Below, one piece after another: positions 46,057-63,760 of a DNA stretch of 64,000 nucleotides; the first letter of the stretch is position 1, and each line of letters begins with the position of its first letter. The position numbers and the translations under genes were made by a program. The stretch is taken from positions 1 to 64,000 of the IMG/VR virus record IMGVR_UViG_3300031707_000001, one strand, 5' to 3'. The notes below the pieces were generated by a model that saw only the letters and a program-made list of their open reading frames with translations, had not been told where the DNA came from and made no database searches.

Positions 46057-46062
46057 TTGTTC

Positions 46063-46120
46063 GGGGTGGTAGCCTAATGGACAGGGCAACAGTCCTCTAA
46101 ACTGTTTTGTGCGGGTTCGA
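46063..46120 (+). pseudogene. tRNA-Arg(UCU) truncated in the T loop
   Basis: D and anticodon arms intact (CC-TCT-AA); ends at GCGGGTTCGA with no complementary 3' part. Confidence 0.7.
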
Positions 46121-46257
46121 CGGAACGATCGTGAAATCCCTGTTTTGCAGGATAGACAACGTACTGTAAGTGTCAACGGTTGCATACCCAGACGGCCGGC
46201 ATGTCTAGGTGGAGTGGTTCGATTCCACAGGTACACGGAACGTTCGTGAAATCCCTG
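46120..46257 (+). repeat. 23-bp direct repeat (46120-46142, 46235-46257) flanking a degenerate tRNA-like unit
   Basis: ACGGAACG(A/T)TCGTGAAATCCCTG twice; inner unit has a GTGG-TTCGATT-CCAC T arm. Confidence 0.7.
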
Positions 46258-46271
46258 CTTTATTCGTTTTT

Positions 46272-46403
46272 GACATGCGACGTGCGTATTGTTCGCACTA
46301 TGACTTGGTGAACGTGCTAGCCAACGTTCCCGTATGTGTACTGCCTACAGGCCAATAACCTGTTGAACCAGCAGAGCCAGCTCTGACAACCTGGCCGCAT
46401 GTC
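46272..46403 (+). ncRNA. Multibranch structured RNA
   Basis: GACATGCG/CGCATGTC closes hairpins GTGCG/CGCAC, GAACGT/ACGTTC, ACAGG/CCTGT, CAGAGC/GCTCTG. Confidence 0.5.
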
Positions 46404-46408
46404 TCTAT

Positions 46409-46484
46409 GGAGGTGTAGCTCAGTTGATAGAGCAGCCGGCTCTTAACCGGCGGGTCGTGGGTTTGAATCCCTCCACCTCTACCA
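46409..46484 (+). tRNA. tRNA-Lys(CUU)
   Basis: Loop CT-CTT-AA, CCA. Confidence 0.9.
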
Positions 46485-46512
46485 TTTCGTTAACGTCAAC
46501 AAAAAGGAAAAG

Positions 46513-46723
46513 TATGAGTCCGTTTAGCTATTATTTGATTACGTTGTTGAGTGAGGCAACACTCATTCGAGTGGCGTTGAAGACAGACGTAGACGTTGAG
46601 TTTTACATGGAACCGGAAGGTATAGCACAGCTTTTGGCTTTGCTTCCTCCACACGTACGAAGCATTGGTCCAATTGTAGACGTTGAAGAGATATTTGACG
46701 TCGTAGACGCAACAGTGAAGTAA
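46513..46723 (+). CDS. Hypothetical protein
   Basis: AAGGA RBS. Confidence 0.5.
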
Positions 46724-46756
46724 ATACAGTGAAACAGTAGAAAGGATAGTGTTGGT

Positions 46757-47839
46757 ATGAAGAAAGAATCGAAAGATATTATGATCTCGTTCGACACGAC
46801 AGGGAGCATGTACCCCTGTCTGACCCAAGTGCGGCGCAACGTATCCGCCTTGGTAACCCGGTTGTTCAAGGACATTCCGGACCTGCGAATCGGTATTATT
46901 GCTCACGGTGACTACTGTGACAAGAATCTGACGTACATTACGAAGATGCTGGATCTGACCAACGACAAGGATAAGATCGTCCATTTCGTAAACAACGTGG
47001 AAGCTACAGGGGGTGGAGATTCCCCGGAGTGCTACGAGTTTGTGTTGAACCAGGTACGTACGCTGGCTTCCTGGTCAAGTGGCAAGTCGAAGATCCTGAT
47101 CATGATTGGTGACGATGTGGCGCATAGCCCAAGGGAAACGCAGAACTTCAAGAAGCTGGAATGGCAGAACGAGATCGGCCTGATCAAAGAAGCAGGTATC
47201 AAGGTCTATGCCGTGCAGGCGCTGGGACGCAGCCATGCAACCAGTTTCTGGCGTACAATGGCATTTAAGTCGAACGGCTACTACATCACGCTGAATCAGT
47301 TTGCGGACATTCAGCACATGATCACAGCGGCTGGCTACAAGCAGCGGGGTGACAGTTTCCTGCAGGACTATGAAAAGGAACTGATTACCAATGGTGTGAT
47401 GAACCGGGACCTGGATTCAGCGATCGGTACCATGTTGGGACGAGAAACAAGTTCCAGGTTCAAGGTCAGTCGTACTCGCTTGGGTGCTGTGGACAGTGGA
47501 CGTTTTCAGGTTATGGAAGTGGACGAAAGATGTCCCATCAAGGAATTTGTGGAAGCACAAGGTGTTACATTCAAGGTAGGACGTGGATTCTATGAGTTCA
47601 CGAAGTCATCGGTTATTCAGCACTATAAGGAAGTAATCCTGATGGATAACCGGACTGGTGACCTGTTCAGTGGAGACAAAGCCCGGGAGCTGGCTAACAT
47701 TCCGATCGGGGTAACAGCCAAGCTGGGCCCGACACTGGTACCTGGCTACACAGTATTTGTGCAGTCAACATCATATAACCGGGCGCTCATGCCAGGAACG
47801 AAGTTCCTGTACGAGATTCCGGATTGGGAACGAGTTTAG
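46757..47839 (+). CDS. von Willebrand factor A domain protein
   Basis: FDTTGSM (MIDAS), GDYCD, GGGDSPECYE, IGDD. Confidence 0.85.
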   Translation: MKKESKDIMISFDTTGSMYPCLTQVRRNVSALVTRLFKDIPDLRIGIIAHGDYCDKNLTYITKMLDLTNDKDKIVHFVNNVEATGGGDSPECYEFVLNQVRTLASWSSGKSKILIMIGDDVAHSPRETQNFKKLEWQNEIGLIKEAGIKVYAVQALGRSHATSFWRTMAFKSNGYYITLNQFADIQHMITAAGYKQRGDSFLQDYEKELITNGVMNRDLDSAIGTMLGRETSSRFKVSRTRLGAVDSGRFQVMEVDERCPIKEFVEAQGVTFKVGRGFYEFTKSSVIQHYKEVILMDNRTGDLFSGDKARELANIPIGVTAKLGPTLVPGYTVFVQSTSYNRALMPGTKFLYEIPDWERV

Positions 47840-47842
47840 ATT

Positions 47843-48148
47843 ATGACACTTGACGAGATGAAGGCTTTGTTTGAAAAATACAGTAGTGGTGAAAGCATCG
47901 AATACGTAGCATTCAAACGAGTTAAGAATCCGAAGTGTAAACGTCCTGATATTTGTGCGTTTATTCGTTTGGACGAACTCGTTTCGGGAAAAGCGTACAT
48001 GGTGTCAGCAGCCGAACACGACGAAATCTTTTTAGACGTAGACGTGGAAGAGTTGGCTGCCGTAGTTACAGAAGAGGACATTGTCATGCTGCTACGTTGT
48101 GGAGTACGCTATGACAGTAGCGTGGACTCGTTGGCTATGTTCGTATGA
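47843..48148 (+). CDS. Conserved phage hypothetical protein
   Basis: RPDICAF..SAAEHDEI..LLRCGV. Confidence 0.7.
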   Translation: MTLDEMKALFEKYSSGESIEYVAFKRVKNPKCKRPDICAFIRLDELVSGKAYMVSAAEHDEIFLDVDVEELAAVVTEEDIVMLLRCGVRYDSSVDSLAMFV

Positions 48149-48297
48149 TTTGAATTTGTGGCCTGGGGACATCCCACGCAAAGTGACGTCCGAGTGTGGC
48201 CGGTTGAATAGCCGGCGTGAAGCCTACGGATACGTATGGGTTCATTGGCACTAACCTGGGCCTTATACAACAACCGAAGAAGAAAGAGGAAACGAAA

Positions 48298-48903
48298 ATG
48301 AGCAAAGGATCGATAGTTAGTTTGGGTATCGTGGGTGTTATTGTTTTGCTGCTAATCTGTATCATCTCCTGGTTCATCGGTGTGAAGAATGGAGAAATTA
48401 CGTTGGCTAATCGGTATGAGGCACAGTTCAACGTGGTGGAAACCACACTGGATACCATGCGCAAAACGATCATGAATCAGACCAAGTGTACCCGGGAATG
48501 GGCAGAGAAGTTCATTGCCGTGGTCATGGCACAGGCAGCTGGCAGATCCGGTGTAGTAGCCGGTGGTGCTGAAGCAGGCCCAAATGCCAAGAATGCGGCT
48601 GTAGCGGCCGCTGTAGGGTCAGGGGGTCTAGGTATCAACGTCAGCAGGGAATCGGAGGCGCTAGGCCTAACGCCGGCCCTCTATCAGCAGCTGGCTAATA
48701 GCATCGAAGGGAAACTGGCCGAATTCAAACGGTCCCAGGACACCCTTACGGACATATGGCAGACGCATAAGACGTTCTGTCAGAAGTTCCCGGCCAGCCT
48801 GGTAGTAGGCGACAAAGTGAAGCCCAAGCCCAGGATGATTACATCCGAGGATACGAAGGCTGCAGTGGCCACGGGAGTCATCAGCGACGATCTGATGAAA
48901 TGA
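48298..48903 (+). CDS. Membrane-anchored protein (LemA-like topology)
   Basis: N-terminal TM followed by helical domain; GAGG RBS. Confidence 0.65.
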   Translation: MSKGSIVSLGIVGVIVLLLICIISWFIGVKNGEITLANRYEAQFNVVETTLDTMRKTIMNQTKCTREWAEKFIAVVMAQAAGRSGVVAGGAEAGPNAKNAAVAAAVGSGGLGINVSRESEALGLTPALYQQLANSIEGKLAEFKRSQDTLTDIWQTHKTFCQKFPASLVVGDKVKPKPRMITSEDTKAAVATGVISDDLMK

Positions 48904-48904
48904 T

Positions 48905-50065
48905 ATGTTTCTAGCAATTACAACATTGCTTCCGGCAATCGCCATAGTGGGGATCCTGGCATCCCCACTATGGTGTGTTACTATAGGCCGAGACATGGAT
49001 CAGTATTTGGCTCGGAAGAAATTGCTGATCTTCAGCTTGGCTTCGTTTGTTATGTCCGCTTGCGTGTCCGGAGCGCTTTATGGCTTTGCAGCCATGAGCA
49101 TCATGGATAAGGAAGTATGGCACTTCAAGATCTTTACGATCCGACACGAAGAAGAATGGACGACGCACGAGACTCGGACGGAAACATATACCACAGGCAG
49201 CGGTAAGCATCAAACCACGCATACAAAGACAGTGCACTATACAGAAAACCACGGACCATATTGGACAGCTATAGACGAGCGTAGTAGCGAACATAGGATT
49301 GACTCGTCCGAGTACGATAAGTGGTCCAAGGTATGGGGAAATCAGCTTCAAACGGGCGTGCACAAAGGCAGTTCAGCAGGCTGGGATCGTTCGATAACTG
49401 GCAAGATCTTTGAATGCAAGTGGACCAGAGACTTTGAACGGATTTATCCGTGGGACGAGATACATCACTACAAGAACAAGGTGCGGCATTGCAGTTCTGT
49501 TCTGAAGTACAGGGAACCTACCAAGGAACTAGAAAAGCTGTATCCACGGCCGGCTGAGTCGGGTGACTGTTCACCCGTGTTGTGTTACGGTGCTTCCCTT
49601 GGAGCAGCTGATATACAGCGATTGCGACAGGTTAACGCAGAGTTGGGTCCCAAGTACCTGGTGCATACGCTTTTAGTATTGTTCGGAAAGGATGCAGATC
49701 GTTCGAAGATTGACGATATCCTGAGTGCTTGGAGGAGCGTCAACAAGAATGAATTGGTAACCTTCTTGGCTCTGGATGGTGGATCCACCGTAAGATGGTG
49801 TGAGGTCCAAAGTTGGATGGACGATACTACGATCCATGCTACGTTAAGGGATGCCTTGGTAGCTGAACCGTTTACGGCCAGGCGATATTCCGACCTGTTG
49901 ATGCAGTACGTGCCGAAGCAGTGGAAGAAAAAGAACTTCCACGATTTCGACTATCTGCGGGTTGAAATACCGATAGGATGGAAGGTGATAGCAATACTGG
50001 TCGTGATTGGTGGATTGGTAGGCATCTTTGTTGTTGTAGACCAAAAAGTAACGTTGTCATGGTAA
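48905..50065 (+). CDS. Multi-TM membrane protein
   Basis: Two N-terminal and one C-terminal hydrophobic helices. Confidence 0.75.
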   Translation: MFLAITTLLPAIAIVGILASPLWCVTIGRDMDQYLARKKLLIFSLASFVMSACVSGALYGFAAMSIMDKEVWHFKIFTIRHEEEWTTHETRTETYTTGSGKHQTTHTKTVHYTENHGPYWTAIDERSSEHRIDSSEYDKWSKVWGNQLQTGVHKGSSAGWDRSITGKIFECKWTRDFERIYPWDEIHHYKNKVRHCSSVLKYREPTKELEKLYPRPAESGDCSPVLCYGASLGAADIQRLRQVNAELGPKYLVHTLLVLFGKDADRSKIDDILSAWRSVNKNELVTFLALDGGSTVRWCEVQSWMDDTTIHATLRDALVAEPFTARRYSDLLMQYVPKQWKKKNFHDFDYLRVEIPIGWKVIAILVVIGGLVGIFVVVDQKVTLSW

Positions 50066-50073
50066 GGAGGCGT

Positions 50074-50556
50074 ATGTTCGCACGTAGTCAGTCTATCAAA
50101 AGGTATGTGGCAGAACACTCTCCGAAGAGTTTTGCCAGGCGGATTGAAAGCCGCAATCGAAAACTTCTGAATGCGTTGTTGAAAATAGGTCCGAAAGTGA
50201 CGACCTATACGCATGTGTGGATAAACAACGGATGTCCTCATTGCAATGAGTACAATTGCCAAAGATGCCTGTGGACAACTGCTGCAGAGAAATTTGCACT
50301 TGACGAGACAACAGGCTGTTCAGATTGTTGTGACACGGAATTTGGTGGAGTATCTTATTGTGATGTGACTGGGGAAGATACTCAATATTATTGGGTTGAG
50401 TATAAGGATTGCGGAGCATCCTTGCATACAAGAGATACTCGTGACCTGCGGCAAGGTTGCCCAACTCCAAAAGAGGAATACGACAATCTTGTGGCCTTTT
50501 TGAAAGGGCATATTGCCTGGGCACAATGGGAATGCTGGGGAAAGAAATACAAATAG
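50074..50556 (+). CDS. Hypothetical protein
   Basis: AAGGAGG RBS; stop overlaps tRNA-Val. Confidence 0.65.
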   Translation: MFARSQSIKRYVAEHSPKSFARRIESRNRKLLNALLKIGPKVTTYTHVWINNGCPHCNEYNCQRCLWTTAAEKFALDETTGCSDCCDTEFGGVSYCDVTGEDTQYYWVEYKDCGASLHTRDTRDLRQGCPTPKEEYDNLVAFLKGHIAWAQWECWGKKYK

Positions 50557-50630
50557 GCGGTTAACTCAGTTGGTAGAGTGTCAGATCTACACTCTGAATG
50601 TCACAGGTTCAAGTCCTGTACCGCCTACCA
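50555..50630 (+). tRNA. tRNA-Val(UAC), C33
   Basis: Loop TC-TAC-AC, A73, CCA. Confidence 0.88.
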
Positions 50631-50631
50631 T

Positions 50632-50708
50632 GTGCCTGTAGCTCAATTGGACAGAGCATCTGACTACGGATCAGAAGGTTGCAGGTTCGATTCCTGCCAG
50701 GCACGCCA
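50632..50708 (+). tRNA. tRNA-Arg(ACG)
   Basis: Loop CT-ACG-GA, CCA. Confidence 0.95.
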
Positions 50709-50720
50709 TTAGGAGTAAGT

Positions 50721-51137
50721 ATGAAGTTTGTTGAAGTTGCAGAAAGCATAGCCCGAGTGGCTCACGAAGGCCAGGTTCGAAAACTGGGCGAGGAAAAGGG
50801 TAAACCTTACATTGTTCATCCAGAACGGATAGCAGCAAAGGTTGAAGGAGATACGTTGAAGTCGATAGCCTGGCTTCACGATGTGTTGGAAGATTGCCCC
50901 GCTTACACGTCTCTAACGTTGGCTGTGGCCGGCATACCTGAAGACGTGATCGATGTGGTTAAGTTGTTGACCCGTCGTCCGGGGGTTCCTTATCTGGAAT
51001 ATTTGTTGGGCGTAGTCACTAACGACTATGCAATTGAAGTCAAACTGATGGATCTCGAAGATAATCTTCGGACGTGTCCACCCGGCAATATGAGGGACAA
51101 GTACGAGTTGGCTAAGTACATACTGGAGAATTACTAG
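50721..51137 (+). CDS. HD-domain hydrolase (SpoT/Mesh1-like)
   Basis: AHEGQVRK..PYIVHP..AWLHDVLED..KLMD. Confidence 0.85.
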   Translation: MKFVEVAESIARVAHEGQVRKLGEEKGKPYIVHPERIAAKVEGDTLKSIAWLHDVLEDCPAYTSLTLAVAGIPEDVIDVVKLLTRRPGVPYLEYLLGVVTNDYAIEVKLMDLEDNLRTCPPGNMRDKYELAKYILENY

Positions 51138-51138
51138 T

Positions 51139-51381
51139 ATGGCTGATTTTTGCACAAACTGTGTACGAGAAATGTTTGGCGCCAAAGATGACCAGGGGCT
51201 CAAACCAGACATTGACGTGAAGAAGATCTTCAAGAAGCTGAAGAAGGACCACTATGCCGAGGTACTTTGTGAAGGATGTGGCATGGTAGCTATAGGGAAC
51301 ATGGATGGAAAATTGAAGGTGCGTTATATCAACAGTTGTGAATGGCACGACTATGGGAGGCAATTACGAAAGTCCAAGTAA
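51139..51381 (+). CDS. Conserved phage hypothetical protein
   Basis: MADFCTNC..LCEGCG. Confidence 0.65.
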   Translation: MADFCTNCVREMFGAKDDQGLKPDIDVKKIFKKLKKDHYAEVLCEGCGMVAIGNMDGKLKVRYINSCEWHDYGRQLRKSK

Positions 51382-51548
51382 CATTTAAGCATCCTGATGT
51401 CACATTCGATGCACTCGAAGCTGTAAAGAACGAAGACGATCATGATAAGCTGGAACGTGTGTTCATGAAGTTCATCGAATTCGGAGAATACCTTAGAGTT
51501 GAGTTTGACACAGAAGCCCAAACGGCAACTGTGATTACTTGTAAATAG
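51342..51548 (+). CDS. Hypothetical protein
   Basis: EYLRVEFDTE; stop overlaps tRNA-Ser. Confidence 0.55.
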   Translation: MARLWEAITKVQVTFKHPDVTFDALEAVKNEDDHDKLERVFMKFIEFGEYLRVEFDTEAQTATVITCK

Positions 51549-51639
51549 GCGGGGTAGGCTAATAGCGGAAGTCAACAGTCTTGAAAACTGTCGGTCCTCG
51601 AAAGAGGCCATGGGGGTTCGAATCCCTCTCCCGCCGCCA
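51548..51639 (+). tRNA. tRNA-Ser(UGA)
   Basis: Loop CT-TGA-AA, long V arm, G73, CCA. Confidence 0.92.
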
Positions 51640-51640
51640 C

Positions 51641-51727
51641 GGAAGTGTGTGCCGAACAGTAAGGCAGCAGGCTGCTATCCTGCCTCCCGCAAGGGAATTG
51701 CACGTGCAAATCGTGCCGCTTCCGCCA
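51641..51727 (+). tRNA. tRNA-Ser(GCU)
   Basis: Loop CT-GCT-AT, V arm, T loop TGCAAAT, G73, CCA. Confidence 0.88.
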
Positions 51728-51927
51728 CTTTGAGAAGGAGTAGTTATGTATCTTATTTTTTGTGAGTACGACGAATACTGTCAAGGTTGGGAGGCAACCT
51801 CTGGCTACTTTCTGGTGTATGCTGATAGTTTTGAGGCAGCCTGTAATAAGTTAAGTCAATGTTATAGCCCGCTTGATTACACGGCCTTTCGAAACTTCAA
51901 GGACTGTACGATCAAATAGGAGGTTTT

Positions 51928-52239
51928 GTGGACAAGAAGAAGTTTGTTGAATGTGTGAACGCAAAGATGGAAAAAGACCTGGTCGAATGGGCCGGCACAA
52001 CGGTGATAAAAGAATTGGGTAGGCGTAAGAAGCTCATTGAGAAAATGAGCAAAGAATATCTGGAATCTCCGGAAGGTCAAAAGTATCTACACCGGCGTGT
52101 GCTGGAGACTGTGCGTTCCTACATCGACGATGTAGGAGACGTTTTCGATTACAGCTTTTGGGATAAGTTAATACGCCATGCGGTTACGTCTTCGTTCAAA
52201 CCTGAAATTCTAAAACTCGTCTTGAAAAACAAGAGGTAG
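51928..52239 (+). CDS. Hypothetical protein
   Basis: AGGAGG RBS, GTG start. Confidence 0.6.
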   Translation: MDKKKFVECVNAKMEKDLVEWAGTTVIKELGRRKKLIEKMSKEYLESPEGQKYLHRRVLETVRSYIDDVGDVFDYSFWDKLIRHAVTSSFKPEILKLVLKNKR

Positions 52240-52244
52240 AAGAA

Positions 52245-52460
52245 ATGGCGTACAAGTTCAATAATGGAACAGGCGCTGTGATTTGTGATCACTGCGGCAT
52301 TACGATTGACGAAGGTCTTAGCTACACGGAATACGAAGAATGTTATGGAAGCGAGCAGAAGAAGGACTACTGCACCAGATGCTTCCACCCGGCAAACCGA
52401 CAGAAAGTTAAGGAGGAATCCGATGGCGAGCGATTTGATAGTGCCCGTTGTGAAGCTTGA
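52245..52460 (+). CDS. Hypothetical Zn-ribbon protein
   Basis: KFNNGTGAVICDHC. Confidence 0.6.
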   Translation: MAYKFNNGTGAVICDHCGITIDEGLSYTEYEECYGSEQKKDYCTRCFHPANRQKVKEESDGERFDSARCEA

Positions 52461-53547
52461 ACAGTTGAGACCTCACCCCAATGCTGACAAGTTGGAGTTG
52501 GTCAACGTATTGGGATACCAGATGTGTGTGCCCAAAGGATTGCACAAGGATGGCGACGTCATGGTGTACTTCCCTGCGGATACACTTATTCCGGCTACGT
52601 GGGCGGATTCTTTTGGCGTACGCAAGTACCTGAAGGGTAAGGATCAGGATCGTGTCGGCCGAATCAAGCTGCGGGGTGAGCCTTCGTTTGGACTGGTAGT
52701 CCAGCCGCCTAAGCTACCTGCTGATGTAAAATTCAATGTTGGCGACAATGTGGCTGACTACTATGGTGCCAAGAAGTACGAGCCGCCGGTTCGTGCTACT
52801 GCCGGCGATGCTGCTGCCCGGGATCCTTTGATCGATCCATTCTTTGAGCAGTTCACGGACGTGCAGAACGGACGTATGTTTACGGATATCTTCGTTGATG
52901 GCGAGGAAGTCATCTGCACGGAGAAGATCCACGGTACCAACTGCAAGGTTGGATGTATTGATGGTAAGCCTGTGGCTGGATCTATGGGCGTACGCAGAAA
53001 GCGTCCAACAAAATTATTTGAAGGTCAGGAAATTCCTTGTAAACTAACTGATGATGCAATTGCTACAAACACCTATTGGTTTCCGTTTAGCCTTCCTGGT
53101 GTTAGAAGCCTCATGTCTGACTTTGCAGAACAGGAAATCAAAGAGCCTGTACTGCTCTACGGAGAAGTATATGGTGGTAGTATACAGAGTCTGGACTACG
53201 GTATACCTAAAGGTAAGGGCTTGGGCTTTCGAGCATTTGGACTCAAAGTCAATGGTAGGTTTTTGGACTGGGACGTTTTCGCAGATACATGTATAAAATA
53301 TGGTGTTAAGATGGTTCCAGTTCTTGGGCGTGGCCCTTTCAGTATGGAGAAGGCCAAACACTATGCAGACGGAACATCTGTTCTTTGGACCGATGCGGGA
53401 GTTAAGGTAGAACATATGCGTGAAGGTTGTGTAATCTATCCGGTCAAGGAACGTGAACACCCGAAGATCGGGCGGGTCATCCTAAAGTATATCGGAACCG
53501 AGTATGAGCTTAGCAAACACAAAGAACAAGACACAAAGGACGTTTGA
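52423..53547 (+). CDS. RNA ligase, DRB0094 family
   Basis: N-terminal OB-like HPNADKLE; motif I TEKIHGTN, YGEVYG, REGCVI, LKYI. Confidence 0.9.
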   Translation: MASDLIVPVVKLEQLRPHPNADKLELVNVLGYQMCVPKGLHKDGDVMVYFPADTLIPATWADSFGVRKYLKGKDQDRVGRIKLRGEPSFGLVVQPPKLPADVKFNVGDNVADYYGAKKYEPPVRATAGDAAARDPLIDPFFEQFTDVQNGRMFTDIFVDGEEVICTEKIHGTNCKVGCIDGKPVAGSMGVRRKRPTKLFEGQEIPCKLTDDAIATNTYWFPFSLPGVRSLMSDFAEQEIKEPVLLYGEVYGGSIQSLDYGIPKGKGLGFRAFGLKVNGRFLDWDVFADTCIKYGVKMVPVLGRGPFSMEKAKHYADGTSVLWTDAGVKVEHMREGCVIYPVKEREHPKIGRVILKYIGTEYELSKHKEQDTKDV

Positions 53548-53646
53548 TTATGGGTACAAAGAAAGCCAAGATAGTGGAGAAGACCAATAGCACAAAACGT
53601 TTGGAGGCCGTCAAGCGGGCACAAAAAGTTGTTGCCTGTTTGATGC

Positions 53647-54006
53647 GTGATCTCGATCGCTTTGACAAGGAAATCGACAAGCTGGCCAAAGAGGTTAACA
53701 TCATTGAAAACGGACCAACCAAAAACTGACGGACTGTTCAAAAGGTGTCCCGGATACAAGACCAATTTTGATACGCTGTGCGGGGCGATCAAAAACGAGG
53801 ATGTCTGCATTGCAGCTTGTACCGACAAAGCCACAGGAAAAGAGGTGGCTGTTATATGCGCCGTTATGCGCAAAGTCGGCGGAGATTACGTACTAATCCC
53901 GATGGCCAAAATGTTTGACGGTAATCCATACGAAGAGGTAAATCCACCAGGGAAGGAAGAAGAACATGGCAAAAGCAAAGCCGAGTCTGTATGCGCCACC
54001 AATTGA
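53647..54006 (+). CDS. Hypothetical protein (start uncertain)
   Basis: VLIPMAKMFDGNPYEE. Confidence 0.5.
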   Translation: MISIALTRKSTSWPKRLTSLKTDQPKTDGLFKRCPGYKTNFDTLCGAIKNEDVCIAACTDKATGKEVAVICAVMRKVGGDYVLIPMAKMFDGNPYEEVNPPGKEEEHGKSKAESVCATN

Positions 54007-54169
54007 GGCATCAGATCTGAAGAGGGGCAAGTATGCCGGTTATTGCAAAGGCTGCAGTGGTCTTCTTTGCGAATTGGACAAAGTCGACGACGGATATAAA
54101 TGTCCACGTTGTGGTACAACGGTAAAAACCCCCGAGAAGACCAAGAAGGAAAGTACAACGTGGTCATGA
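53966..54169 (+). CDS. Hypothetical Zn-ribbon protein
   Basis: CKGC and CPRC. Confidence 0.55.
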   Translation: MAKAKPSLYAPPIEASDLKRGKYAGYCKGCSGLLCELDKVDDGYKCPRCGTTVKTPEKTKKESTTWS

Positions 54170-54364
54170 GAGATTTGAATGAAGATCTGTTGTACTTAGT
54201 GGTCTTGGATGACCAGACGTTTGTACGCAAGATGCGGTGGGACCAGATGTGGCATCTGGTGAACGGTAATCCTGCCATGCCTTTCCTCAAGGCGGGATAC
54301 AAACGCATTAGCTCACGCAGAGCCAGGGCGTTAATTCGACGTAAGGAAAAGTCCGGATTCTAGT

Positions 54365-54438
54365 ACGGCAGTGGTATACAGGCTGTGCCCAGCTCTCCAA
54401 AAGCTGTGAAGTAGGTTCAACTCCTACCTGCCGTGCCA
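54365..54438 (+). tRNA. tRNA-Trp(CCA)
   Basis: Loop CT-CCA-AA, G73, CCA. Confidence 0.9.
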
Positions 54439-54440
54439 GT

Positions 54441-54516
54441 GGGCCCGTGATGCAACGGCAGACAGGGCAGACTTAAAATCTGTTTCTTGTGGGTTCGAAT
54501 CCCACCGGGCCTACCA
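54441..54516 (+). tRNA. tRNA-Leu(UAA) with short variable loop
   Basis: Loop CT-TAA-AA, 5-nt V loop TTCTT, A73, CCA. Confidence 0.88.
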
Positions 54517-54718
54517 ATTTAGGAGCCAATTGTGACTGAAAAGAAGCTTACCAGAGGTGAGAAAAACAAAAAGCGGCATCGACTACAGCTTTTGCTCCGG
54601 CCAAAAACCCAGCGATGCGAACTATGTGGGGGACAGATGGCGTGGTGTACTACTTGTCAAACATGGACCCGCATATGTTGCGTAGACTACGGGACTTGCA
54701 TGTGCAGCTAACCTTTGT

Positions 54719-54780
54719 GGGTGCGTAGCTCAGTGGTAGAGCCATGGAAACCGTGGGTTCGAATCCCGCCGCATCCACCG
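54719..54780 (+). ncRNA. Anticodon-less tRNA-Ala-like RNA
   Basis: GGGTGCG/CGCATCC (G3.U70), A73, canonical D and T arms joined by about 9 nt; ends CCG. Confidence 0.75.
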
Positions 54781-54952
54781 ATCTTTGAAGGAAACCCGAA
54801 TGAACAAAGGAACATATGAGCAGAATAACATTAGGAATAGGGGCTATAAACTTTTTCGCACTTAGTTTTATAATGCCAGACAGTGAACAGCATATATGTC
54901 TGATGTTTGCACTGTTGTGTGCAATACTAGCTACAAGTGTTAGGAACCCTAA

Positions 54953-55156
54953 ATGACCAAAGAAGAGATGATACAGTGGATTGATAATGCTAGCTATGAA
55001 GACTTGCTTAGGAAGTGGCGGTTTGCTGATGTGGCAAATCCCTTCTTCTGCGCTGAAGTAGGTGCACATTACAAAGAGGTTATGTTCAAGCGCCGTGATG
55101 AAGTGGGACCTGAAGCAGCCGTGGCAGCAAGCAAGTCCGTAGGATGGGATAACTAG
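54953..55156 (+). CDS. Conserved phage hypothetical protein
   Basis: WIDNASYEDLLRKWRFA. Confidence 0.65.
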   Translation: MTKEEMIQWIDNASYEDLLRKWRFADVANPFFCAEVGAHYKEVMFKRRDEVGPEAAVAASKSVGWDN

Positions 55157-55678
55157 ATGACACAAGAACAAGAGCTGAAAGTAGTAGAACTTTGCAAGCA
55201 GTTTATGATGGTGGCGGAAGAGGTCAACTTGACCTTCATTGATCTGTGTAAGATCAGGGACAAGTACTTCCCAATCATCAATGGGCGTCGGGTACAAAAC
55301 CCCGCCGACATAGCAAAGAGCATTCAGATACTGGACGAACACAAGAAGAACCTGCAGGCCGTACTGACTGATACAATGGGTGTAAAATTCGAAGGGGAAC
55401 TGGTAACCGGGCATAAGTCTGATGCTAAAATACAGGCAGCTAAGCCTGTTGCAGCACTTCCGGCAGCGCCTTTGGAAGTACCCCAGGATGCAGTGATTTT
55501 GGATCAGTTCATCCTTGACTACAAAATGGGTGGTCCCAAGACCAAGTGGAAGGTGCGTCAGGTAATAGCCGAAGCACGAAAGACAGGATCCATATCCAAA
55601 AAGAACGTAGAGTATTTGAAGAAGGTTGCCAAAGGCGAACCTACAGATAAGTTCATTGCTACGCTGAAGGTAGAGTAA
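55157..55678 (+). CDS. Hypothetical protein
   Basis: 173 aa. Confidence 0.7.
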   Translation: MTQEQELKVVELCKQFMMVAEEVNLTFIDLCKIRDKYFPIINGRRVQNPADIAKSIQILDEHKKNLQAVLTDTMGVKFEGELVTGHKSDAKIQAAKPVAALPAAPLEVPQDAVILDQFILDYKMGGPKTKWKVRQVIAEARKTGSISKKNVEYLKKVAKGEPTDKFIATLKVE

Positions 55679-55682
55679 TTCT

Positions 55683-56375
55683 ATGATCATTGTTGCTGGA
55701 GATATACACGGGGATTTTGGAAGCTTGAATGCCATGATAAACAAGCAGAATCCAGAGATCATTTTGCAATGTGGAGATTTCGGATTTTGGCCCGCTATGC
55801 GTCCACAGGACTTCTACGGACCTACCGGCCACAAAAATGCCAAGCTTCCAATTCCCAGGGTGGGTAAGACCAAGGTATACTGGTGCGATGGAAACCACGA
55901 GGATCATCATTCGTTGATTGCACGTAAGACCAACGAGTTGTGGCCTAACGTATTCTATCAGCCTAGGGCTTCCACACTGCAACTGCCGGACGGTCGCACA
56001 GTGTTGTTTATGGGTGGCGCCGATTCCTACGACAAACCGTATCGGACTCCGAACATAGATTGGTTCCAGGAAGAACTGATTACTCAGGCCGATATGGATC
56101 GGTTGCCCAAGTGCAAAGTGGACATCGTTATAAGTCATACCTGCCCTTGTGAGTTTGTAATGGGAATGGGGCTTGGTTTTGATCTACGGCTTAACGATCC
56201 ATGCCGGCACGCATTGTCTATGATTCTACACGAATACAAGCCAGCGCTCTGGTACTTTGGGCATTGGCACAAAAACATAACATATTACGATAGCGAATGG
56301 GGTTGTCGGTGGACGGCATTAAGCCATACAACCGGCGGAGGGTCTGGCCGCTGGTGGGAGGAACTACGAACATGA
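55683..56375 (+). CDS. Calcineurin-like metallophosphoesterase
   Basis: GDIHG, GDFG, GNHE, SHT and GHWH motifs. Confidence 0.88.
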   Translation: MIIVAGDIHGDFGSLNAMINKQNPEIILQCGDFGFWPAMRPQDFYGPTGHKNAKLPIPRVGKTKVYWCDGNHEDHHSLIARKTNELWPNVFYQPRASTLQLPDGRTVLFMGGADSYDKPYRTPNIDWFQEELITQADMDRLPKCKVDIVISHTCPCEFVMGMGLGFDLRLNDPCRHALSMILHEYKPALWYFGHWHKNITYYDSEWGCRWTALSHTTGGGSGRWWEELRT

Positions 56376-57868: not shown

Positions 57869-58426
57869 ATGAAGATAAAGAGTATTGTTGCCAACGATGG
57901 ACAAAAGCGAAAGCATGCACTAATACGTTGCCACTATTGCCATAAATATTTTTGGAAATCAATACACTTAATGAAACAGAGTATAAATCATTTCTGCTCT
58001 GTTGTGTGTAGTCGTTTAGGACACCGTAAGCGAAAGAAATTCAAATGTGCCTTTTGTGGCGAACAAGGTGAGAAGCCACTTCAAAAATTTTCTAAAAGTA
58101 AATCGAAGCTACATTTTTGTTCTCGGCGATGCAAGGATTTAGGCCAAAGTATAACTTATGGCTTAGAAAAAATGTGGCCTAAGCACTACAATAGAAATGG
58201 CGGGAGTGTAGATTTTTATCGTAGGCTTGCATGGCACAGTTATAAGCACTACTGCGCAGGTTGTGGCTATGATAAAATACCTGAAATTCTAGAGGTGCAC
58301 CATATCGATCGAAATAGAAAAAATAATAAAGTAGAGAATCTAATACTCCTTTGTTCCACCTGTCATACGATAATTACACTCGGTTACGGTAAACTGGTAA
58401 ATCGTAAACTTGTTATGGGGCAGTAG
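57869..58426 (+). CDS. HNH endonuclease with Zn fingers
   Basis: FCSxxC twice; CAGCG..LEVHHIDRNRKNN..NLILLCSTCH. Confidence 0.9.
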   Translation: MKIKSIVANDGQKRKHALIRCHYCHKYFWKSIHLMKQSINHFCSVVCSRLGHRKRKKFKCAFCGEQGEKPLQKFSKSKSKLHFCSRRCKDLGQSITYGLEKMWPKHYNRNGGSVDFYRRLAWHSYKHYCAGCGYDKIPEILEVHHIDRNRKNNKVENLILLCSTCHTIITLGYGKLVNRKLVMGQ

Positions 58427-58527: not shown

Positions 58528-59274
58528 ATGGGTAAGTTATGCGAAGTGTTAGCGGTAGAAGGTGAATTGGACTCGACCTGCAAGGCAGTCCTGGAAGAAG
58601 CGACGAAGACGTTCAAAGATAAGGCTGCTCACTTTGTGGGTCAGACTAAAACCTACGAACCCTTCGAAGAAGGTACGCCAGGGTTGCCCGAAGAACACCT
58701 GGCCATGGTCACAACGGTAAACGAGAAGCTGGCCTACGTGTTTGAACACCTGGTCAAGCTGATTGATGCCAAGGCCCAGAAGGACGCTACAAATCAGGTA
58801 GCCAAGGCCGACATCGTGACGGATAGCGGAACGTTGGCTACGGGTGTGCCGGCCACGACATTGTTGGGGTTGGAAGCAACCCTGCGTCAGGTGAAGGCAT
58901 TGGCGCTGGAAGTGCCCACGTTGCCTCCAGGCATCGAATGGAAGAAGGATCCTGCCTTGGGCAAGGACATCTATCATCGGGTACATCCCGCCGTGACGTT
59001 CAAGACCCGTAAGACCTTCCGACACAAAGTGCTGGTGGAGCCCACCAAGGAACACCCTGCTCAGATCGAAAAGTGGAGCGAGGACGAGAACATCGGCAAG
59101 TTTATCACAGATGCATGGTCAGGCATGTTGACGCCGGCCGAGAAGAGTGATATGATTGGCCGCATTGATACGTTGGCTCGGGCTGTGAAAGAGGCCCGGC
59201 AGCGTGCCAATACAACCGAAGTTGTGAAGATCAAGCTGGCGAAGAGTCTGATGGACTACATTCTGCCGGCATAA
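58528..59274 (+). CDS. Conserved hypothetical protein (family I recognise from bacteria and phage; function unknown)
   Basis: KLCEVLAVE..TYEP..KDATNQVAKADI..LLGLE..HPAQIE..WSG..AVKEARQRAN. Confidence 0.8.
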   Translation: MGKLCEVLAVEGELDSTCKAVLEEATKTFKDKAAHFVGQTKTYEPFEEGTPGLPEEHLAMVTTVNEKLAYVFEHLVKLIDAKAQKDATNQVAKADIVTDSGTLATGVPATTLLGLEATLRQVKALALEVPTLPPGIEWKKDPALGKDIYHRVHPAVTFKTRKTFRHKVLVEPTKEHPAQIEKWSEDENIGKFITDAWSGMLTPAEKSDMIGRIDTLARAVKEARQRANTTEVVKIKLAKSLMDYILPA

Positions 59275-59382
59275 TGCTTTTGGGTAGACTTATCCTTATC
59301 GTTATGTTCTGATCGTGCTCCCGACTAAGTCTCGGAAAGAGCGATCAGATATCATCGTTATCGTTATAGTTTTGCCCAAGCA
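59275..59382 (+). ncRNA. Structured RNA with hexamer repeats in a symmetric internal loop
   Basis: TTGGGTAGAC/GTTTTGCCCAA; TCTGATCG/CGATCAGA; TTATCS/ATCGTT units on both loop strands. Confidence 0.65.
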
Positions 59383-59415
59383 ACCTCAGGCGGATGCGTC
59401 ATCCGACAAGGCGGG

Positions 59416-59548
59416 TGCAGGTTCTAATTTAATGTGCGTCGTGGGTTCAATTCCCACTCCGGTCTCCTTCGTACACAAGCCGGGTATTGTGTTCGAAGAG
59501 ACCGGGTAGCTCAGTGGTAGAGCACACAGATTCAACATGAAGCCTGCA
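59416..59548 (+). ncRNA. Circularly permuted tRNA-like RNA (T arm, closed acceptor, then D arm)
   Basis: GTGGG-TTCAATT-CCCAC, TCCGGTC/GACCGGG, TA-GCTC-AGTGGTA-GAGC, TGTG/CACA, TGCAGG/CCTGCA. Confidence 0.78.
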
Positions 59549-59630
59549 ATTCCAGCTCAAGGAGACGAGGAGCCAAATGGATTGTATCCTATGAAGCCTT
59601 CGGGCTGATTAGAAAACATGAAATATCATT

Positions 59631-59668
59631 GGGGGCCCAGATTGGGAATTGATCTGGGCCCCTATTTT
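59631..59668 (+). terminator. Rho-independent terminator
   Basis: GGGGCCCAGAT/ATCTGGGCCCC followed by TATTTT. Confidence 0.75.
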
Positions 59669-59759: not shown

Positions 59760-59781
59760 TTAATGGTAGAGCATTTACCGT

Positions 59782-59810
59782 TTGACAATAGGTCTACCTT
59801 ATGCAATAGT
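59782..59810 (+). promoter_or_regulatory. Sigma70-like promoter of HNH gene (leaderless)
   Basis: TTGACA-N17-AATAGT, ATG 6 nt downstream. Confidence 0.6.
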
Positions 59811-59816
59811 ATTGAC

Positions 59817-60239
59817 ATGAGTAGATCATCACGTTTTAGAATCTGTTCTGTATGCCACAAATCTTATCATGCGTGGGCTAAGGTAGCACTATACTGTTCA
59901 AATGCATGTCAATGGGAACAAGATTACCAAAAACGAATTTTGATTGTTCGAAAGACGCATAATTGGTTTGATGGTTGGCAGAGCTGCACGTCTATTCGAA
60001 ATGCTTTACATAGAGAACGAGGTATACGTTGTGAGATTTGCGGTGGTACAAAGTGGCAGGGAAAACCAATGCCAGTAGTGATGGACCATATTGATGGAAA
60101 TTCGGACAATTGGGTAGATTCTAACTTGCGGCTCGTATGCGGGAACTGTGATATGCAATTGCCTACGTATAAAAATAAGAACAAGGGCAAGGGTCGACAT
60201 AGTCGACGTTTACGCTATCAGCAAGGAAAGTCTTACTAG
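59817..60239 (+). CDS. HNH endonuclease
   Basis: YCSNAC; CEICG..MDHIDGNSDN..NLRLVCGNC. Confidence 0.9.
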   Translation: MSRSSRFRICSVCHKSYHAWAKVALYCSNACQWEQDYQKRILIVRKTHNWFDGWQSCTSIRNALHRERGIRCEICGGTKWQGKPMPVVMDHIDGNSDNWVDSNLRLVCGNCDMQLPTYKNKNKGKGRHSRRLRYQQGKSY

Positions 60240-63642: not shown

Positions 63643-63760
63643 GGCAGGGTAGCTCAGTTGGTAGAGCACGTAATCGTACAGTTTGTATGAACTGGCTACA
63701 GCAACCAAAATTACCCTTATAAGGTCGTGGTCGTGGGTTCGAATCCCACCCCTGCCACCA
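63643..63760 (+). tRNA. tRNA-Ile(UAU) with a 42-nt insert in the anticodon stem (63671-63712)
   Basis: Removing the insert gives CG|ACC-CTTATAA-GGTCG and a canonical cloverleaf with CCA. Confidence 0.8.

What the first reader, a model, noticed from the sequence alone, without database searches (positions are those of the whole stretch)
58528..59382. Conserved unknown protein followed immediately by a hexamer-repeat RNA
Seen: right after the stop, a 108-nt RNA whose large internal loop has same-sense repeats on both strands (TTATCC-TTATCG-TTATG and ATC-ATCGTT-ATCGTT-AT), so they cannot pair, typical of multivalent protein sites. The permuted tRNA mimic follows. My unverified recollection is that this protein family lies beside structured RNAs and TROVE/Ro60 genes in bacteria. 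Inference: a protein plus two-RNA ribonucleoprotein system with autoregulation or a scaffold role.
Basis: partly seen in the sequence, partly recalled or inferred. Interest (0 to 1): 0.72.

Follow-up and report, generated by a model that had tools for sequence, protein, structure and literature searches.

The report
Phage protein with hexamer-repeat tRNA-like RNA
A phage gene of unknown function (DUF7873) is followed, here and in relatives from many phages and bacteria, by a two-part non-coding RNA, a hairpin presenting about eight 6-nt YAGNNU repeats joined to a rearranged tRNA look-alike; it looks like an undescribed protein-RNA partnership that resembles bacterial Ro60/Y RNA particles but lacks Ro60.

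Summary
ORF 58528-59274 is a full-length DUF7873 protein. Two bases after its stop lies a hairpin RNA module (59276-59396). Its 9-bp terminal stem covaries, and its unpaired strands carry in-phase 6-nt units, Y-A-G/U-N-N-U. About 44 nt further on is a circularly permuted tRNA mimic on a long helix (59415-59552), a sub-threshold match to Rfam YrlA.

A covariance model of the repeat hairpin hit 63 sites in 1.5 Mb of related loci. All 63 lie on the gene's strand and downstream of a DUF7873 gene. 58 of 62 testable sites are followed by the mimic, at a median of 41 nt.

In 121 genomes of one bacterial order, the RNA occurred in 12 of 22 DUF7873-positive genomes and in 0 of 99 negative ones. In six of the twelve it is unlinked from the gene, in some as tandem arrays.

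The Ro60 link is not supported as adjacency. The complete phage has no TROVE gene, the Ro60-binding motif occurs at chance level, and TROVE is never adjacent in bacteria.

The protein matches no known fold. Best reading: a Ro60-independent, Y-RNA-like particle in which DUF7873 binds the periodic repeats. Binding itself is untested.

The parts
58528..59274 (+). DUF7873 protein gene (248 aa).
   Evidence: - Pfam PF25283: 240.8 bits, E 2e-71, profile positions 1-242 of 244.
- Single copy in the 210,732-bp genome.
- No match in PHROGs, PADLOC, NCBIfam or PDB sequences.
- AF2 model: pLDDT 89.9, four long helices plus a beta sheet with a long hairpin.
59276..59396 (+). Module 1: the hexamer-repeat hairpin RNA.
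   Evidence: - Model R1 match: 58.2 bits, E 5.5e-9. The window sequence was one of the 21 seeds, so it matches partly by construction.
- MFE -33.1 kcal/mol, z -3.85.
- No Rfam family matches it, even at E<=10.
59279..59287 (+). 5' arm of the terminal stem (TTTGGGTAG). Its last three bases are the YAG of the first repeat unit.
   Evidence: - Pairs with 59372-59380.
- Stem columns are 85.4% paired in 63 homologues against 65.0% in shuffles.
- 114 cells changed on both sides against 36.6 in shuffles (0 of 500 shuffles reach this).
59285..59308 (+). Four in-phase 6-nt units on the 5' strand: TAGACT TATCCT TATCGT TATGTT.
   Evidence: - Sequence.
- In the family profile, A at unit position 2 is 0.80-1.00, U at position 6 is 0.97-1.00, and G at position 3 is 0.62-0.78 (otherwise mostly U).
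59308..59349 (+). Apical hairpin, a variable insert.
   Evidence: - 9-bp stem, 59308-59316 with 59341-59349.
- The stem sequence differs but stays complementary in L154 and L156.
- It is absent in minimal homologues and replaced by a second tRNA mimic in Klebsiella and Ralstonia jumbo phages.
59353..59370 (+). Three in-phase units on the 3' strand: CATCGT TATCGT TATAGT.
   Evidence: - Sequence.
- Two units are conserved at this position across the family (alignment A6, columns 132-145).
59372..59380 (+). 3' arm of the terminal stem (TTGCCCAAG).
   Evidence: -.
- G-U and U-G pairs are frequent (G-U in 45 of 63 at one pair; C-G 29 and U-G 26 at another). The helix therefore exists on this strand only, which points to RNA.
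59381..59389 (+). One and a half further units after the stem (CAACCT CAG).
   Evidence: Family consensus CAGCUUYAG, with A and U invariant in 63 of 63 (columns 159-167).
59415..59552 (+). Module 2: a permuted tRNA mimic on a long helix (YrlA-like).
   Evidence: - Rfam RF02553: 35.3 bits, E 4e-6, model positions 1-114, below the gathering score of 69.
- Neither ARAGORN nor the Rfam tRNA model calls it.
- The flanks pair: duplex -34.0 kcal/mol, z -3.3.
59441..59457 (+). T arm (GTGGG TTCAATT CCCAC).
   Evidence: -.
- RNAalifold on 41 homologues: 5 pairs, 4 of them with compensatory changes, none broken.
59458..59506 (+). 7-bp acceptor stem (59458-59464 with 59500-59506), closed by a hairpin.
   Evidence: - All 7 pairs covary in 41 homologues.
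- The window has U73 followed by CCU. 67 of 93 homologues encode N73-CCA here.
59509..59523 (+). D arm (GCTC AGTGGTA GAGC).
59631..59668 (+). Terminator-like hairpin followed by a U run. It probably marks the 3' end of the transcription unit.
   Evidence: - 15-bp hairpin in the MFE fold.
- It resembles the terminator part of Rfam SdsR_RyeB.
- The simple terminator scan did not call it.

Best explanation
The locus encodes a two-component ribonucleoprotein: the DUF7873 protein and one bipartite non-coding RNA transcribed just downstream of it.

**Module 1** is a hairpin with a 7-9 bp stem. It holds open a long single-stranded region made of about eight 6-nt units, Y-A-G/U-N-N-U: four on the 5' side, two on the 3' side and about two after the stem.

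**Module 2**, about 40 nt further on, is a tRNA elbow with a 7-bp acceptor stem in circularly permuted order: T arm, acceptor 3' strand, linker, acceptor 5' strand, D arm. In place of an anticodon arm it sits on a long helix formed by its own flanks, as in YrlA-type Y RNAs.

**Proposed mechanism (inferred).** Several DUF7873 subunits bind the periodic units, one subunit per unit or pair of units. Each reads the fixed A, G/U and U, as TRAP and HutP read spaced UAG/GAG triplets. The tRNA-like module would engage tRNA-recognising enzymes. In the 72% of homologues that encode N73-CCA followed by a linker, RNase P probably cuts 5' of G1 and leaves a two-piece RNA with a CCA end, as shown for M. smegmatis YrlA.

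The particle would then play the part that Ro60/Y RNA plays elsewhere, but without Ro60. In this phage it lies in a tRNA and RNA-repair island, so a role in tRNA or RNA surveillance, or in countering tRNA-directed host defences, is the most plausible setting.

**Shown:** the anatomy, its conservation and covariation, and the genetic coupling of protein and RNA. **Inferred:** direct binding, stoichiometry, processing and biological role.
For: **Anatomy and conservation**
- The protein is a DUF7873 member.
- The terminal stem covaries.
- Conservation is 6-nt periodic, with near-invariant A and U.
- T arm, acceptor stem and D arm: 15 of 16 pairs show compensatory changes in 41 sequences. These sequences were selected for pairing, so it is the diversity of pairs that is informative, not their presence.
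- The long helix under the mimic: mean duplex energy -24.4 kcal/mol, against -16.0 for shuffled flanks and -14.6 for flanks taken from different loci; 68% of loci have z<-2.

**Coupling of protein and RNA**
- All 63 R1 hits at E<0.01 lie downstream of a DUF7873 gene and on its strand. Median distance from the stop is 14 nt. Nothing else matched in about 1.5 Mb searched on both strands.
- 58 of 62 hits are followed by the mimic, median gap 41 nt.
- The mimic occurs in 72 of 81 viral and 29 of 64 genome loci, against 9 of 712 control windows.
- No protein neighbour is conserved: no cluster is present in more than 12 of about 149 loci.
- In one bacterial order, R1 hits occur in 12 of 22 DUF7873-positive and 0 of 99 negative genomes (p 5.5e-11). 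In six of the twelve the RNA is unlinked from the gene: 107-152 kb away in three genomes and on another contig in three. The three fetched regions hold two or three tandem units.
- The same layout occurs in cultured phages of Klebsiella, Ralstonia, Rhizobium and Vibrio, and the mimic also in a Gordonia phage, in gaps that are unannotated or carry only tiny ORF calls.

**Independence from Ro60**
-.

**RNase P precedent**
- N73-CCA is encoded in 67 of 93 mimics.
Against: - There is no direct evidence that DUF7873 binds RNA. The complex prediction was not folded and cannot be counted either way.
- The protein matches no known RNA-binding fold.
- No RNA-seq run holding this sequence could be listed, so transcription, transcript ends and processing are unverified.
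- 10 of 22 DUF7873-positive genomes in the sampled order gave no R1 hit. Six of those carry a divergent protein subfamily, and the genomes may be incomplete.
- Myxococcota loci carry a variant unit that the model misses.
- The window's own mimic has CCU and a long closing hairpin, so RNase P processing may not apply to this copy.
- The whole-genome enrichment of TROVE with DUF7873 (odds ratio 11) leaves room for a functional link to Ro60.
- The co-occurrence statistics are not corrected for shared ancestry.
Confidence: 0.55

Rival explanations
1. It is an ordinary Ro60/Y RNA system. Module 2 is a YrlA bound by a host-encoded Ro60 (Rsr), module 1 is a YrlB-like second Y RNA, and DUF7873 is an accessory or unrelated neighbour.
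For: - Full-length YrlA matches at E 4e-6 to 8e-5 in the window and four relatives.
- Y RNAs have a long stem plus a large internal loop, and YrlA has exactly this permuted tRNA module (PMC4201824).
- TROVE is enriched in DUF7873-positive genomes of one order: 15 of 22 against 16 of 99, p 3e-6.
- One viral contig has TROVE about 5.6 kb upstream.
Against: - Scores of 32-38 bits are about half the Rfam gathering score of 69, and they come mostly from the generic T and D arms.
- The Ro60-binding motif GNCGAAN0-1G is at chance frequency: 4 of 93 against 4% of random 80-mers.
- There is no TROVE gene in the complete phage, in 48 of 50 related viral records, or in three apparently complete bacterial genomes that hold both the protein and the RNA.
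- TROVE and DUF7873 are never adjacent in the 15 genomes that hold both, whereas published YrlA genes lie within 4 kb of Ro60 on the same strand.
Confidence: 0.15
2. Module 1 is only a cis-acting 3'-UTR element of the DUF7873 mRNA: a stabilising or terminating hairpin, or a site where the protein represses its own message. It would not be part of a trans-acting RNP.
For: - It starts a median of 14 nt after the stop codon, and within 30 nt in 35 of 63 cases.
- No convincing promoter lies between the gene and the RNA in the window.
Against: - In six of the twelve RNA-positive genomes of the sampled order the RNA is away from the gene: 107-152 kb away in three and on another contig in three. The three fetched regions hold two or three tandem ~528-nt units, and in Bernardetia each unit has its own terminator.
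- In nine loci an ORF or tRNAs separate the gene from the RNA by 0.3-1.7 kb.
- No U tract follows the stem.
- Strict 6-nt sequence periodicity and the fixed link to a tRNA mimic are more than a stabilising hairpin needs.
Confidence: 0.1
3. The repeats bind some other multimeric RNA-binding factor (host or phage) rather than DUF7873, for example a TRAP- or HutP-like, Hfq-like or PNPase-type partner. DUF7873 would act on the tRNA-like module or on something else.
For: - The site architecture, spaced YAG triplets, is that of known ring-shaped binders. This rests on established knowledge of TRAP and HutP.
- The DUF7873 model shows no known RNA-binding fold.
Against: - No other protein is a conserved neighbour.
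- The RNA is found only in DUF7873-positive genomes.
- The hosts span several phyla, so a common host factor would have to be universal.
Confidence: 0.15
4. It is a DNA-level element (iterons or an origin, a recombination site, or decayed tRNA genes and simple repeats in a tRNA island) with no RNA function.
For: - Direct repeats resemble iterons.
- Some related phages carry the gene next to SSB, RecA/UvsX, primase and exonuclease genes.
- tRNA islands accumulate tRNA fragments, and adjacent tRNAs can mimic YrlA.
Against: - Orientation is always that of the gene: 63 of 63.
- The stem is full of G-U pairs, which would be A-C mismatches on the other strand.
- Covariation occurs in four helices.
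- The element is conserved down to 33% protein identity across phages and several bacterial phyla.
- There are zero hits in 99 DUF7873-negative genomes.
Confidence: 0.03

Closest known systems
YrlA-type bacterial Y RNAs with Ro60/Rsr (Rfam RF02553; Chen et al. 2014, PMC4201824)
   Same: - A non-coding RNA with a long helix and a tRNA-like domain in the same permuted order: T arm, acceptor-like hairpin, D arm.
- It also occurs in phages.
- The mycobacterial form has a 7-bp acceptor stem, is cut by RNase P and carries CCA.
- It is encoded next to its protein partner and often in more than one copy.
   Different: - No Ro60/TROVE gene lies nearby or, in many genomes, anywhere.
- The Ro60-binding motif is absent.
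- Scores are about half the Rfam threshold.
- It has an extra 5' module of 6-nt repeats that no Y RNA has.
- The linked protein is DUF7873, which has no detectable relation to the Ro60 ring.
TRAP-trp leader and HutP-hut mRNA (ring proteins that read spaced UAG/GAG triplets)
   Same: The RNA site is a run of about 8-9 YAG triplets at regular spacing in unstructured RNA. This is the signature of one-subunit-per-repeat recognition.
   Different: - The spacing is fixed at 6 nt, with a second invariant base (U at position 6).
- The sites sit in a hairpin loop of a trans-acting RNA, not in an attenuator.
- DUF7873 (248 aa, helical bundle plus sheet) shows no similarity to TRAP or HutP.
- The resemblance concerns how it might work, not membership.
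Two-piece (circularly permuted) tmRNA
   Same: The gene order is the same: T arm, acceptor 3' strand, encoded CCA, an intervening linker, then the acceptor 5' strand. Weak partial Rfam beta_tmRNA hits fall on this part in relatives.
   Different: - No tag reading frame and no pseudoknots.
- It has a canonical D arm.
- ARAGORN does not call it.
- The phage carries a normal one-piece tmRNA elsewhere (41078-41446).
Protein-sponge or scaffold sRNAs with repeated motifs (CsrB/RsmZ for CsrA, CrcZ for Hfq/Crc)
   Same: Many copies of one short motif are displayed in single-stranded regions of a small RNA, and the RNA genes may be duplicated.
   Different: - The motif differs and is strictly phased.
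- It is fused to a tRNA mimic.
- It is genetically tied to a protein of unknown fold.

Membership tests
Pfam DUF7873 (PF25283) | Full-length match above the curated cut-off (27 bits). | tested here: met
   240.8 bits, E 2e-71, profile positions 1-242 of 244. All 120 listed homologues carry the same single domain.
YrlA / bacterial Y RNA (Rfam RF02553) | Covariance-model score at or above the gathering score (69 bits). | tested here: not met
   35.3 bits in the window. 32.4, 36.2 and 37.6 bits in three relatives.
YrlA / bacterial Y RNA (Rfam RF02553) | tRNA-like domain in the order T arm, acceptor-like stem-loop, D arm, carried on a stem formed by the flanks. | tested here: met
   Window coordinates. 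Covariation in 41 homologues. Flank pairing z -3.3 in the window, mean z -2.6 in 93 loci.
YrlA / bacterial Y RNA (Rfam RF02553) | Ro60-binding motif GNCGAAN0-1G near the 5' end (Chen et al. 2014). | tested here: not met
   The window has GGCGGGUG. The motif is present in 4 of 93 mimics, against 127 of 3160 random 80-mers.
YrlA / bacterial Y RNA (Rfam RF02553) | Encoded within about 4 kb of a TROVE/Ro60 gene on the same strand. | tested here: not met
   - No TROVE in the complete phage.
- 2 of 50 related viral records have one, the nearest about 5.6 kb away.
- On different contigs or 700 kb apart in 15 bacterial genomes.
YrlA / bacterial Y RNA (Rfam RF02553) | Physical binding to Ro60. | not testable with these tools
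   Needs immunoprecipitation or a gel shift.
tRNA (Rfam RF00005 / ARAGORN) | Contiguous cloverleaf with an anticodon arm. | tested here: not met
   Neither tool calls 59415-59552. The order of the arms is permuted and there is no anticodon arm.
Two-piece permuted tmRNA (e.g. Rfam RF01850) | Permuted tRNA-like domain with an encoded CCA, plus a tag reading frame and pseudoknots. | tested here: not met
   - ARAGORN finds only the one-piece tmRNA at 41078-41446.
- Relatives give partial beta_tmRNA hits of about 25 bits against a gathering score of 84.
- The window copy has CCU, not CCA.
TRAP/HutP-type periodic-triplet binding sites | Runs of (U/G)AG triplets with short fixed spacers, bound by a homo-oligomeric ring protein of the TRAP or HutP fold. 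| tested here: inconclusive
   - The RNA side is met: YAG every 6 nt, about 8 units.
- On the protein side, no fold match to any solved structure was found.
- The oligomeric state was not tested.

The most novel reading that the evidence does not exclude
DUF7873 is the founding protein of a new class of RNP. A homo-oligomer would measure out RNA in 6-nt steps along YAGNNU repeats. It would carry a tRNA-shaped module that, after RNase P cleavage, exposes a real CCA end. Phages and bacteria would use the particle as a Ro60-independent device in conflicts over tRNA, as a decoy or adaptor for enzymes or toxins that act on the acceptor end or elbow of tRNA. The repeat hairpin would be a new RNA motif with a new mode of protein recognition.
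Probability: 0.3. Interest if true: 0.88.

Novelty: new variant of a known kind. Interest (0 to 1): 0.78.

Why it matters
- **A partner for a protein family of unknown function.** DUF7873 occurs in at least 73 cultured phage genomes (Vibrio, Rhizobium, Gordonia, Klebsiella and Serratia jumbo phages, Ralstonia phiRSL1), in over 100 viral contigs and in several bacterial phyla. This work gives it a specific, testable partner.
- **An RNA motif that appears to be undescribed.** It is absent from Rfam 15, and no paper found in the library searches describes it. In the cultured-phage records examined it lies in gaps that are unannotated or carry only tiny ORF calls.
- **A wider view of Y RNAs.** If DUF7873 binds the repeats, tRNA-like Y-type RNAs are not tied to Ro60. 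The bacterial and phage Y RNA idea would widen into a family of modular RNPs.
- **A possible new way of reading RNA.** The strict 6-nt register suggests a way of reading RNA that structural biology could resolve quickly.
- **Relevance to phage-host conflict.** In phages the module sits among tRNA, tmRNA and RNA-ligase genes. It may therefore bear on how large phages protect translation from host tRNA-directed defences.

Tried and rejected
- **Exact-hexamer counting.** Counting hexamers with at most 1 mismatch against dinucleotide shuffles was weak: 14 of 85 loci at p<=0.05 (an earlier version timed out).
- **Plain lag-6 autocorrelation.** It was only modest. The repeats are degenerate, so a phased A[GT]NNT test and the covariance-model profile were used instead.
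- **RNAalifold on the first MAFFT alignment.** It gave no structure because the stems were out of register. A re-trimmed seed with a manually placed stem was used.
- **Quasi-palindrome idea.** I considered that the two loop strands pair as a helix with periodic mismatches, because the units are quasi-palindromes. I dropped it: in minimal homologues all units lie in one hairpin loop, and the energy model leaves them open.
- **Fold searches.** PDB by Foldseek gave TM below 0.25. The wide VIA search gave a best Z of 9.6 to generic helical bundles. AFDB clusters and the ESM Atlas returned only the family itself.
- **Cas7 lead.** A few Foldseek rows to Cas7/Cascade backbone proteins, which also bind RNA in 6-nt steps, have probability about 0.1. 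I treat them as noise, not evidence.
- **Protein-RNA complex prediction.** It is no evidence either way.
- **RNA-seq.** Only sediment DNA metagenomes hold the sequence, and no RNA run was listed.
- **Conserved protein neighbours.** None were found.
- **Bernardetia upstream ORF.** The 238-aa ORF just upstream of the Bernardetia RNA array is not a divergent DUF7873 (hhalign probability 0.4%).
- **Literature.** No paper contains 'DUF7873'. A 2026 preprint on bacterial tRNA mimics covers other families.
Full report
**Setting.** The window is the first 64 kb of a complete 210,732-bp virus record with direct terminal repeats. This part of the genome is a tRNA island. It holds 27 tRNA genes and a one-piece tmRNA, interspersed with small ORFs. 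It also carries an HNH endonuclease, an RNA ligase (52285-53547), a metallophosphoesterase, an AAA ATPase and a VWA protein.

**The observation.** ORF 58528-59274 (+) encodes 248 aa and matches Pfam DUF7873 from end to end (E 2e-71). It has no match in PHROGs, PADLOC, NCBIfam or PDB sequences.

MFE is -33.1 kcal/mol, z -3.85. A 9-bp terminal stem (59279-59287 with 59372-59380) and an apical hairpin (59308-59349) enclose two unpaired strands. Those strands read TAGACT TATCCT TATCGT TATGTT and CATCGT TATCGT TATAGT.

Next comes a permuted tRNA look-alike: T arm 59441-59457, a 7-bp acceptor stem closed by a hairpin, and D arm 59509-59523. Rfam's YrlA (Y RNA-like) model matches it full length at 35.3 bits, E 4e-6, below the gathering score of 69. 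No Rfam family matches the repeat hairpin, even at E<=10.

**Homologues and synteny.** The family is large, mostly metagenomic and always labelled hypothetical. I fetched 80 viral and 67 bacterial or archaeal-MAG loci and two near relatives.

- In the near relatives (85-88% identity), the terminal stem and the 5' repeats are conserved. The apical stem changes sequence but stays complementary. The exact 3' repeats drift.
- Clustering all flanking ORFs found no protein neighbour present in more than 12 of about 149 loci. The commonest are phage replication and recombination genes.
- A pairing-aware scan finds a permuted mimic within 700 nt downstream in 72 of 81 viral and 29 of 64 genome loci, against 9 of 712 control windows.

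**The repeat hairpin is a conserved RNA motif.** Reading the downstream regions showed the same design almost everywhere. A stem encloses runs of 6-nt units such as CAGCUU, UAGCGU and UAUCUU, and one or two more units follow the stem.

- A MAFFT alignment of 21 trimmed examples shows invariant A and T columns every six positions.
- With a manually placed 9-bp stem, 85% of cells pair against 64% in shuffles and 32-52% when the partner is slid. There are 38 double changes against 13.7 in shuffles.
- The covariance model R1 built from this alignment gave 63 hits at E<0.01 in 62 sources: the window, 39 other viral sources and 22 of the 67 genome loci. Forty-two hits are non-seed. Every hit is on the gene's strand and downstream of the gene, and nothing else matched in about 1.5 Mb searched on both strands.
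- Median distance from the stop codon is 14 nt. In nine loci an inserted ORF or tRNAs push the hit 0.3-1.7 kb away.
- In the 63-sequence alignment the stem is 85.4% paired, against 65.0% in shuffles, with 114 double changes against 36.6. This alignment is fitted to the model, so it leans toward the structure.
- G-U pairs are common, so the helix exists only on this strand.
- The column profile is Y-A-G/U-y-n-U. A is 0.80-1.00 and U is 0.97-1.00. There are four units 5' of the variable centre and two 3' of it, then WUUG and the 3' arm, then CAGCUUYAG.
- The YAG of the first unit pairs with the UUG.
- Minimal forms have no apical hairpin and are a single ~45-nt loop of units. Klebsiella and Ralstonia jumbo phages carry a second tRNA mimic in the apical position.

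**The two modules are one unit.** Of 62 R1 hits with enough downstream sequence, 58 are followed by the mimic, at a median of 41 nt and a minimum of 36. Two of the four misses have a mimic visible in their sequence that the scan missed, and one of these (L056) has a YrlA match.

- In 41 aligned mimics, RNAalifold recovers the T arm, acceptor stem and D arm. Compensatory changes occur in 15 of 16 pairs.
- The sequences flanking the tRNA-like core pair with each other: mean -24.4 kcal/mol, against -16.0 for shuffled flanks and -14.6 for flanks from different loci. The core therefore sits on a long helix, as in Y RNAs.
- 67 of 93 mimics encode N73-CCA directly after the acceptor 3' strand, then an A-rich linker and UAU before G1.
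- Chen et al. showed that M. smegmatis YrlA, the form with a 7-bp acceptor stem, is cut by RNase P and carries CCA in vivo (PMC4201824). The same processing is a reasonable inference for most members of this family.
- The window's copy has CCU and a longer closing hairpin, so the inference is weaker here.

**Coupling with the protein beyond synteny.** In 121 genomes drawn from the order of Bernardetia, 22 carry DUF7873 and 12 have an R1 hit at E<=0.001. All 12 are among the 22. None of the 99 DUF7873-negative genomes has a hit (Fisher p 5.5e-11, not corrected for phylogeny).

In six of the twelve the RNA is not next to the gene. In three apparently complete genomes it lies 107-152 kb away, as two or three tandem units of about 528 nt. 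Read out in Bernardetia, each unit holds the hairpin, the mimic, an odd tRNA and a terminator. The RNA is therefore an independent gene that travels with the protein. It is not merely a 3' UTR.

**Ro60.**
- The complete phage has no TROVE gene.
- TROVE occurs in 2 of 50 related viral records, once about 5.6 kb from DUF7873.
- In the 15 genomes of the sampled order that hold both genes, they are on different contigs or 700 kb apart.
- Three apparently complete genomes with the protein and the RNA lack TROVE.
- The published Ro60-binding motif GNCGAAN0-1G is at chance level upstream of the mimic: 4 of 93.
- Against this, TROVE is enriched among DUF7873-positive genomes of that order: 15 of 22 against 16 of 99, p 3e-6. 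This may reflect lineage or a shared pathway.

**The protein.** AlphaFold2 with a 127-sequence alignment gives a confident model (pLDDT 89.9, pTM 0.78). It has four long helices and a sheet with a long beta hairpin.

- Invariant or near-invariant residues include K206 and the ARQRAN motif (223-228) on the last long helix. They also include HPAQ (176-179) at the hairpin tip.
- No solved or predicted structure outside the family matches convincingly.
- The complex prediction was not folded and is not evidence.
- No RNA-seq run could be listed.

**Interpretation.** What is shown is a conserved bipartite RNA gene, strand-specific and structurally constrained, that is genetically coupled to DUF7873 in phages and bacteria. 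What is inferred is that DUF7873 binds the periodic units as an oligomer.

- The architecture, spaced YAG triplets with a second fixed base, is that of sites read one subunit per repeat, as for TRAP and HutP.
- The tRNA-like module would bring in tRNA-recognising enzymes and, in most members, would be processed by RNase P.

The closest known system is Ro60 with YrlA. This RNA shares YrlA's tRNA module and helix but fails three of YrlA's defining features: score, Ro60 motif and Ro60 adjacency. It also adds a module and a protein that Y RNPs lack. I therefore class it as a new variant of a known kind.

**Testability.** The same layout sits, in gaps that are unannotated or carry only tiny ORF calls, in cultured phages of Klebsiella, Ralstonia (phiRSL1 ORF270), Rhizobium (RHph_Y65) and Vibrio. 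A Gordonia phage (Fryberger gp122) has the mimic, but its repeat hairpin is not evident. The hypothesis can be tested directly.

Noticed in passing
window 63643-63757 and 54719-54777: Two Rfam tRNA matches that ARAGORN does not call. One is 115 nt long (51.9 bits), suggesting an inserted sequence or intron. The other is only 59 nt (48.4 bits), suggesting a truncated or arm-less tRNA.
   Followed up: no
window 41078-41446: The phage encodes its own one-piece tmRNA (82.7 bits; tag peptide GNTLKLAA), in addition to 27 tRNAs in this 64-kb window.
   Followed up: no
window 43361-56375: RNA-repair-style gene set just upstream of the finding: AAA ATPase (43361-44809), VWA protein (46757-47839), RNA ligase with PHA02142 OB domain (52285-53547) and calcineurin-like phosphoesterase (55683-56375). 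The close relative L154 has the ligase and the phosphoesterase in the same order.
   Followed up: partly
window 57869-58426 and 59763-60239: The DUF7873-RNA unit is flanked by tRNA genes. Beyond the upstream tRNA-Ala lies an HNH endonuclease gene (confirmed by Pfam), the kind of ORF that often marks mobile insertions in tRNA islands. Beyond the downstream tRNA-Thr lies a Cys-rich ORF with no Pfam match.
   Followed up: partly
L167 3313-3508 (Klebsiella phage KpLz-2_45) and L170 (Ralstonia phage phiRSL1), downstream of the DUF7873 gene: In these jumbo phages the apical part of the repeat hairpin holds a second complete permuted tRNA mimic. In the Klebsiella phage this inner mimic encodes CCA. 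The RNA therefore carries two tRNA-like modules.
   Followed up: partly
L163 6380-8060 (-) (Bernardetia sp. chromosome), L164, L165: RNA units unlinked from the gene occur as 2-3 tandem ~528-nt repeats. In Bernardetia (L163) each unit ends in a terminator. Each unit there also holds a conventional-order tRNA-like gene. ARAGORN reads two of these with a 2- or 4-nt 'anticodon' (type '???'); the last in each array is tRNA-Leu. A MoxR-type AAA_3 ATPase gene lies upstream of the array.
   Followed up: partly
L090 1378-1458 and 1550-1629: Two copies of the repeat hairpin lie downstream of one DUF7873 gene, separated by a run of N. This is either a true duplication or a scaffolding artefact.
   Followed up: no
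L099-L107, L118, L122, L152 (Myxococcota loci): These loci carry a visibly related hairpin with G+C-rich units (CAGGCU GUGCGU GAUCGU CAGGCU). Model R1 does not detect it, so the counts of RNA-positive loci are lower bounds.
   Followed up: no
L018 (viral contig of 103,737 bases), about 5.6 kb upstream of the DUF7873 gene: The only case found where a TROVE/Ro60 gene lies near DUF7873, on the same strand. It would be a natural place to ask whether the two proteins share an RNA.
   Followed up: no
window 59128-59156: A sigma-70-like promoter match (TTGACG, 17 nt, TATGAT with an upstream TG) lies inside the 3' end of the DUF7873 ORF. It could drive the RNA independently of the mRNA. The number of such matches in the region is not above chance.
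   Followed up: no
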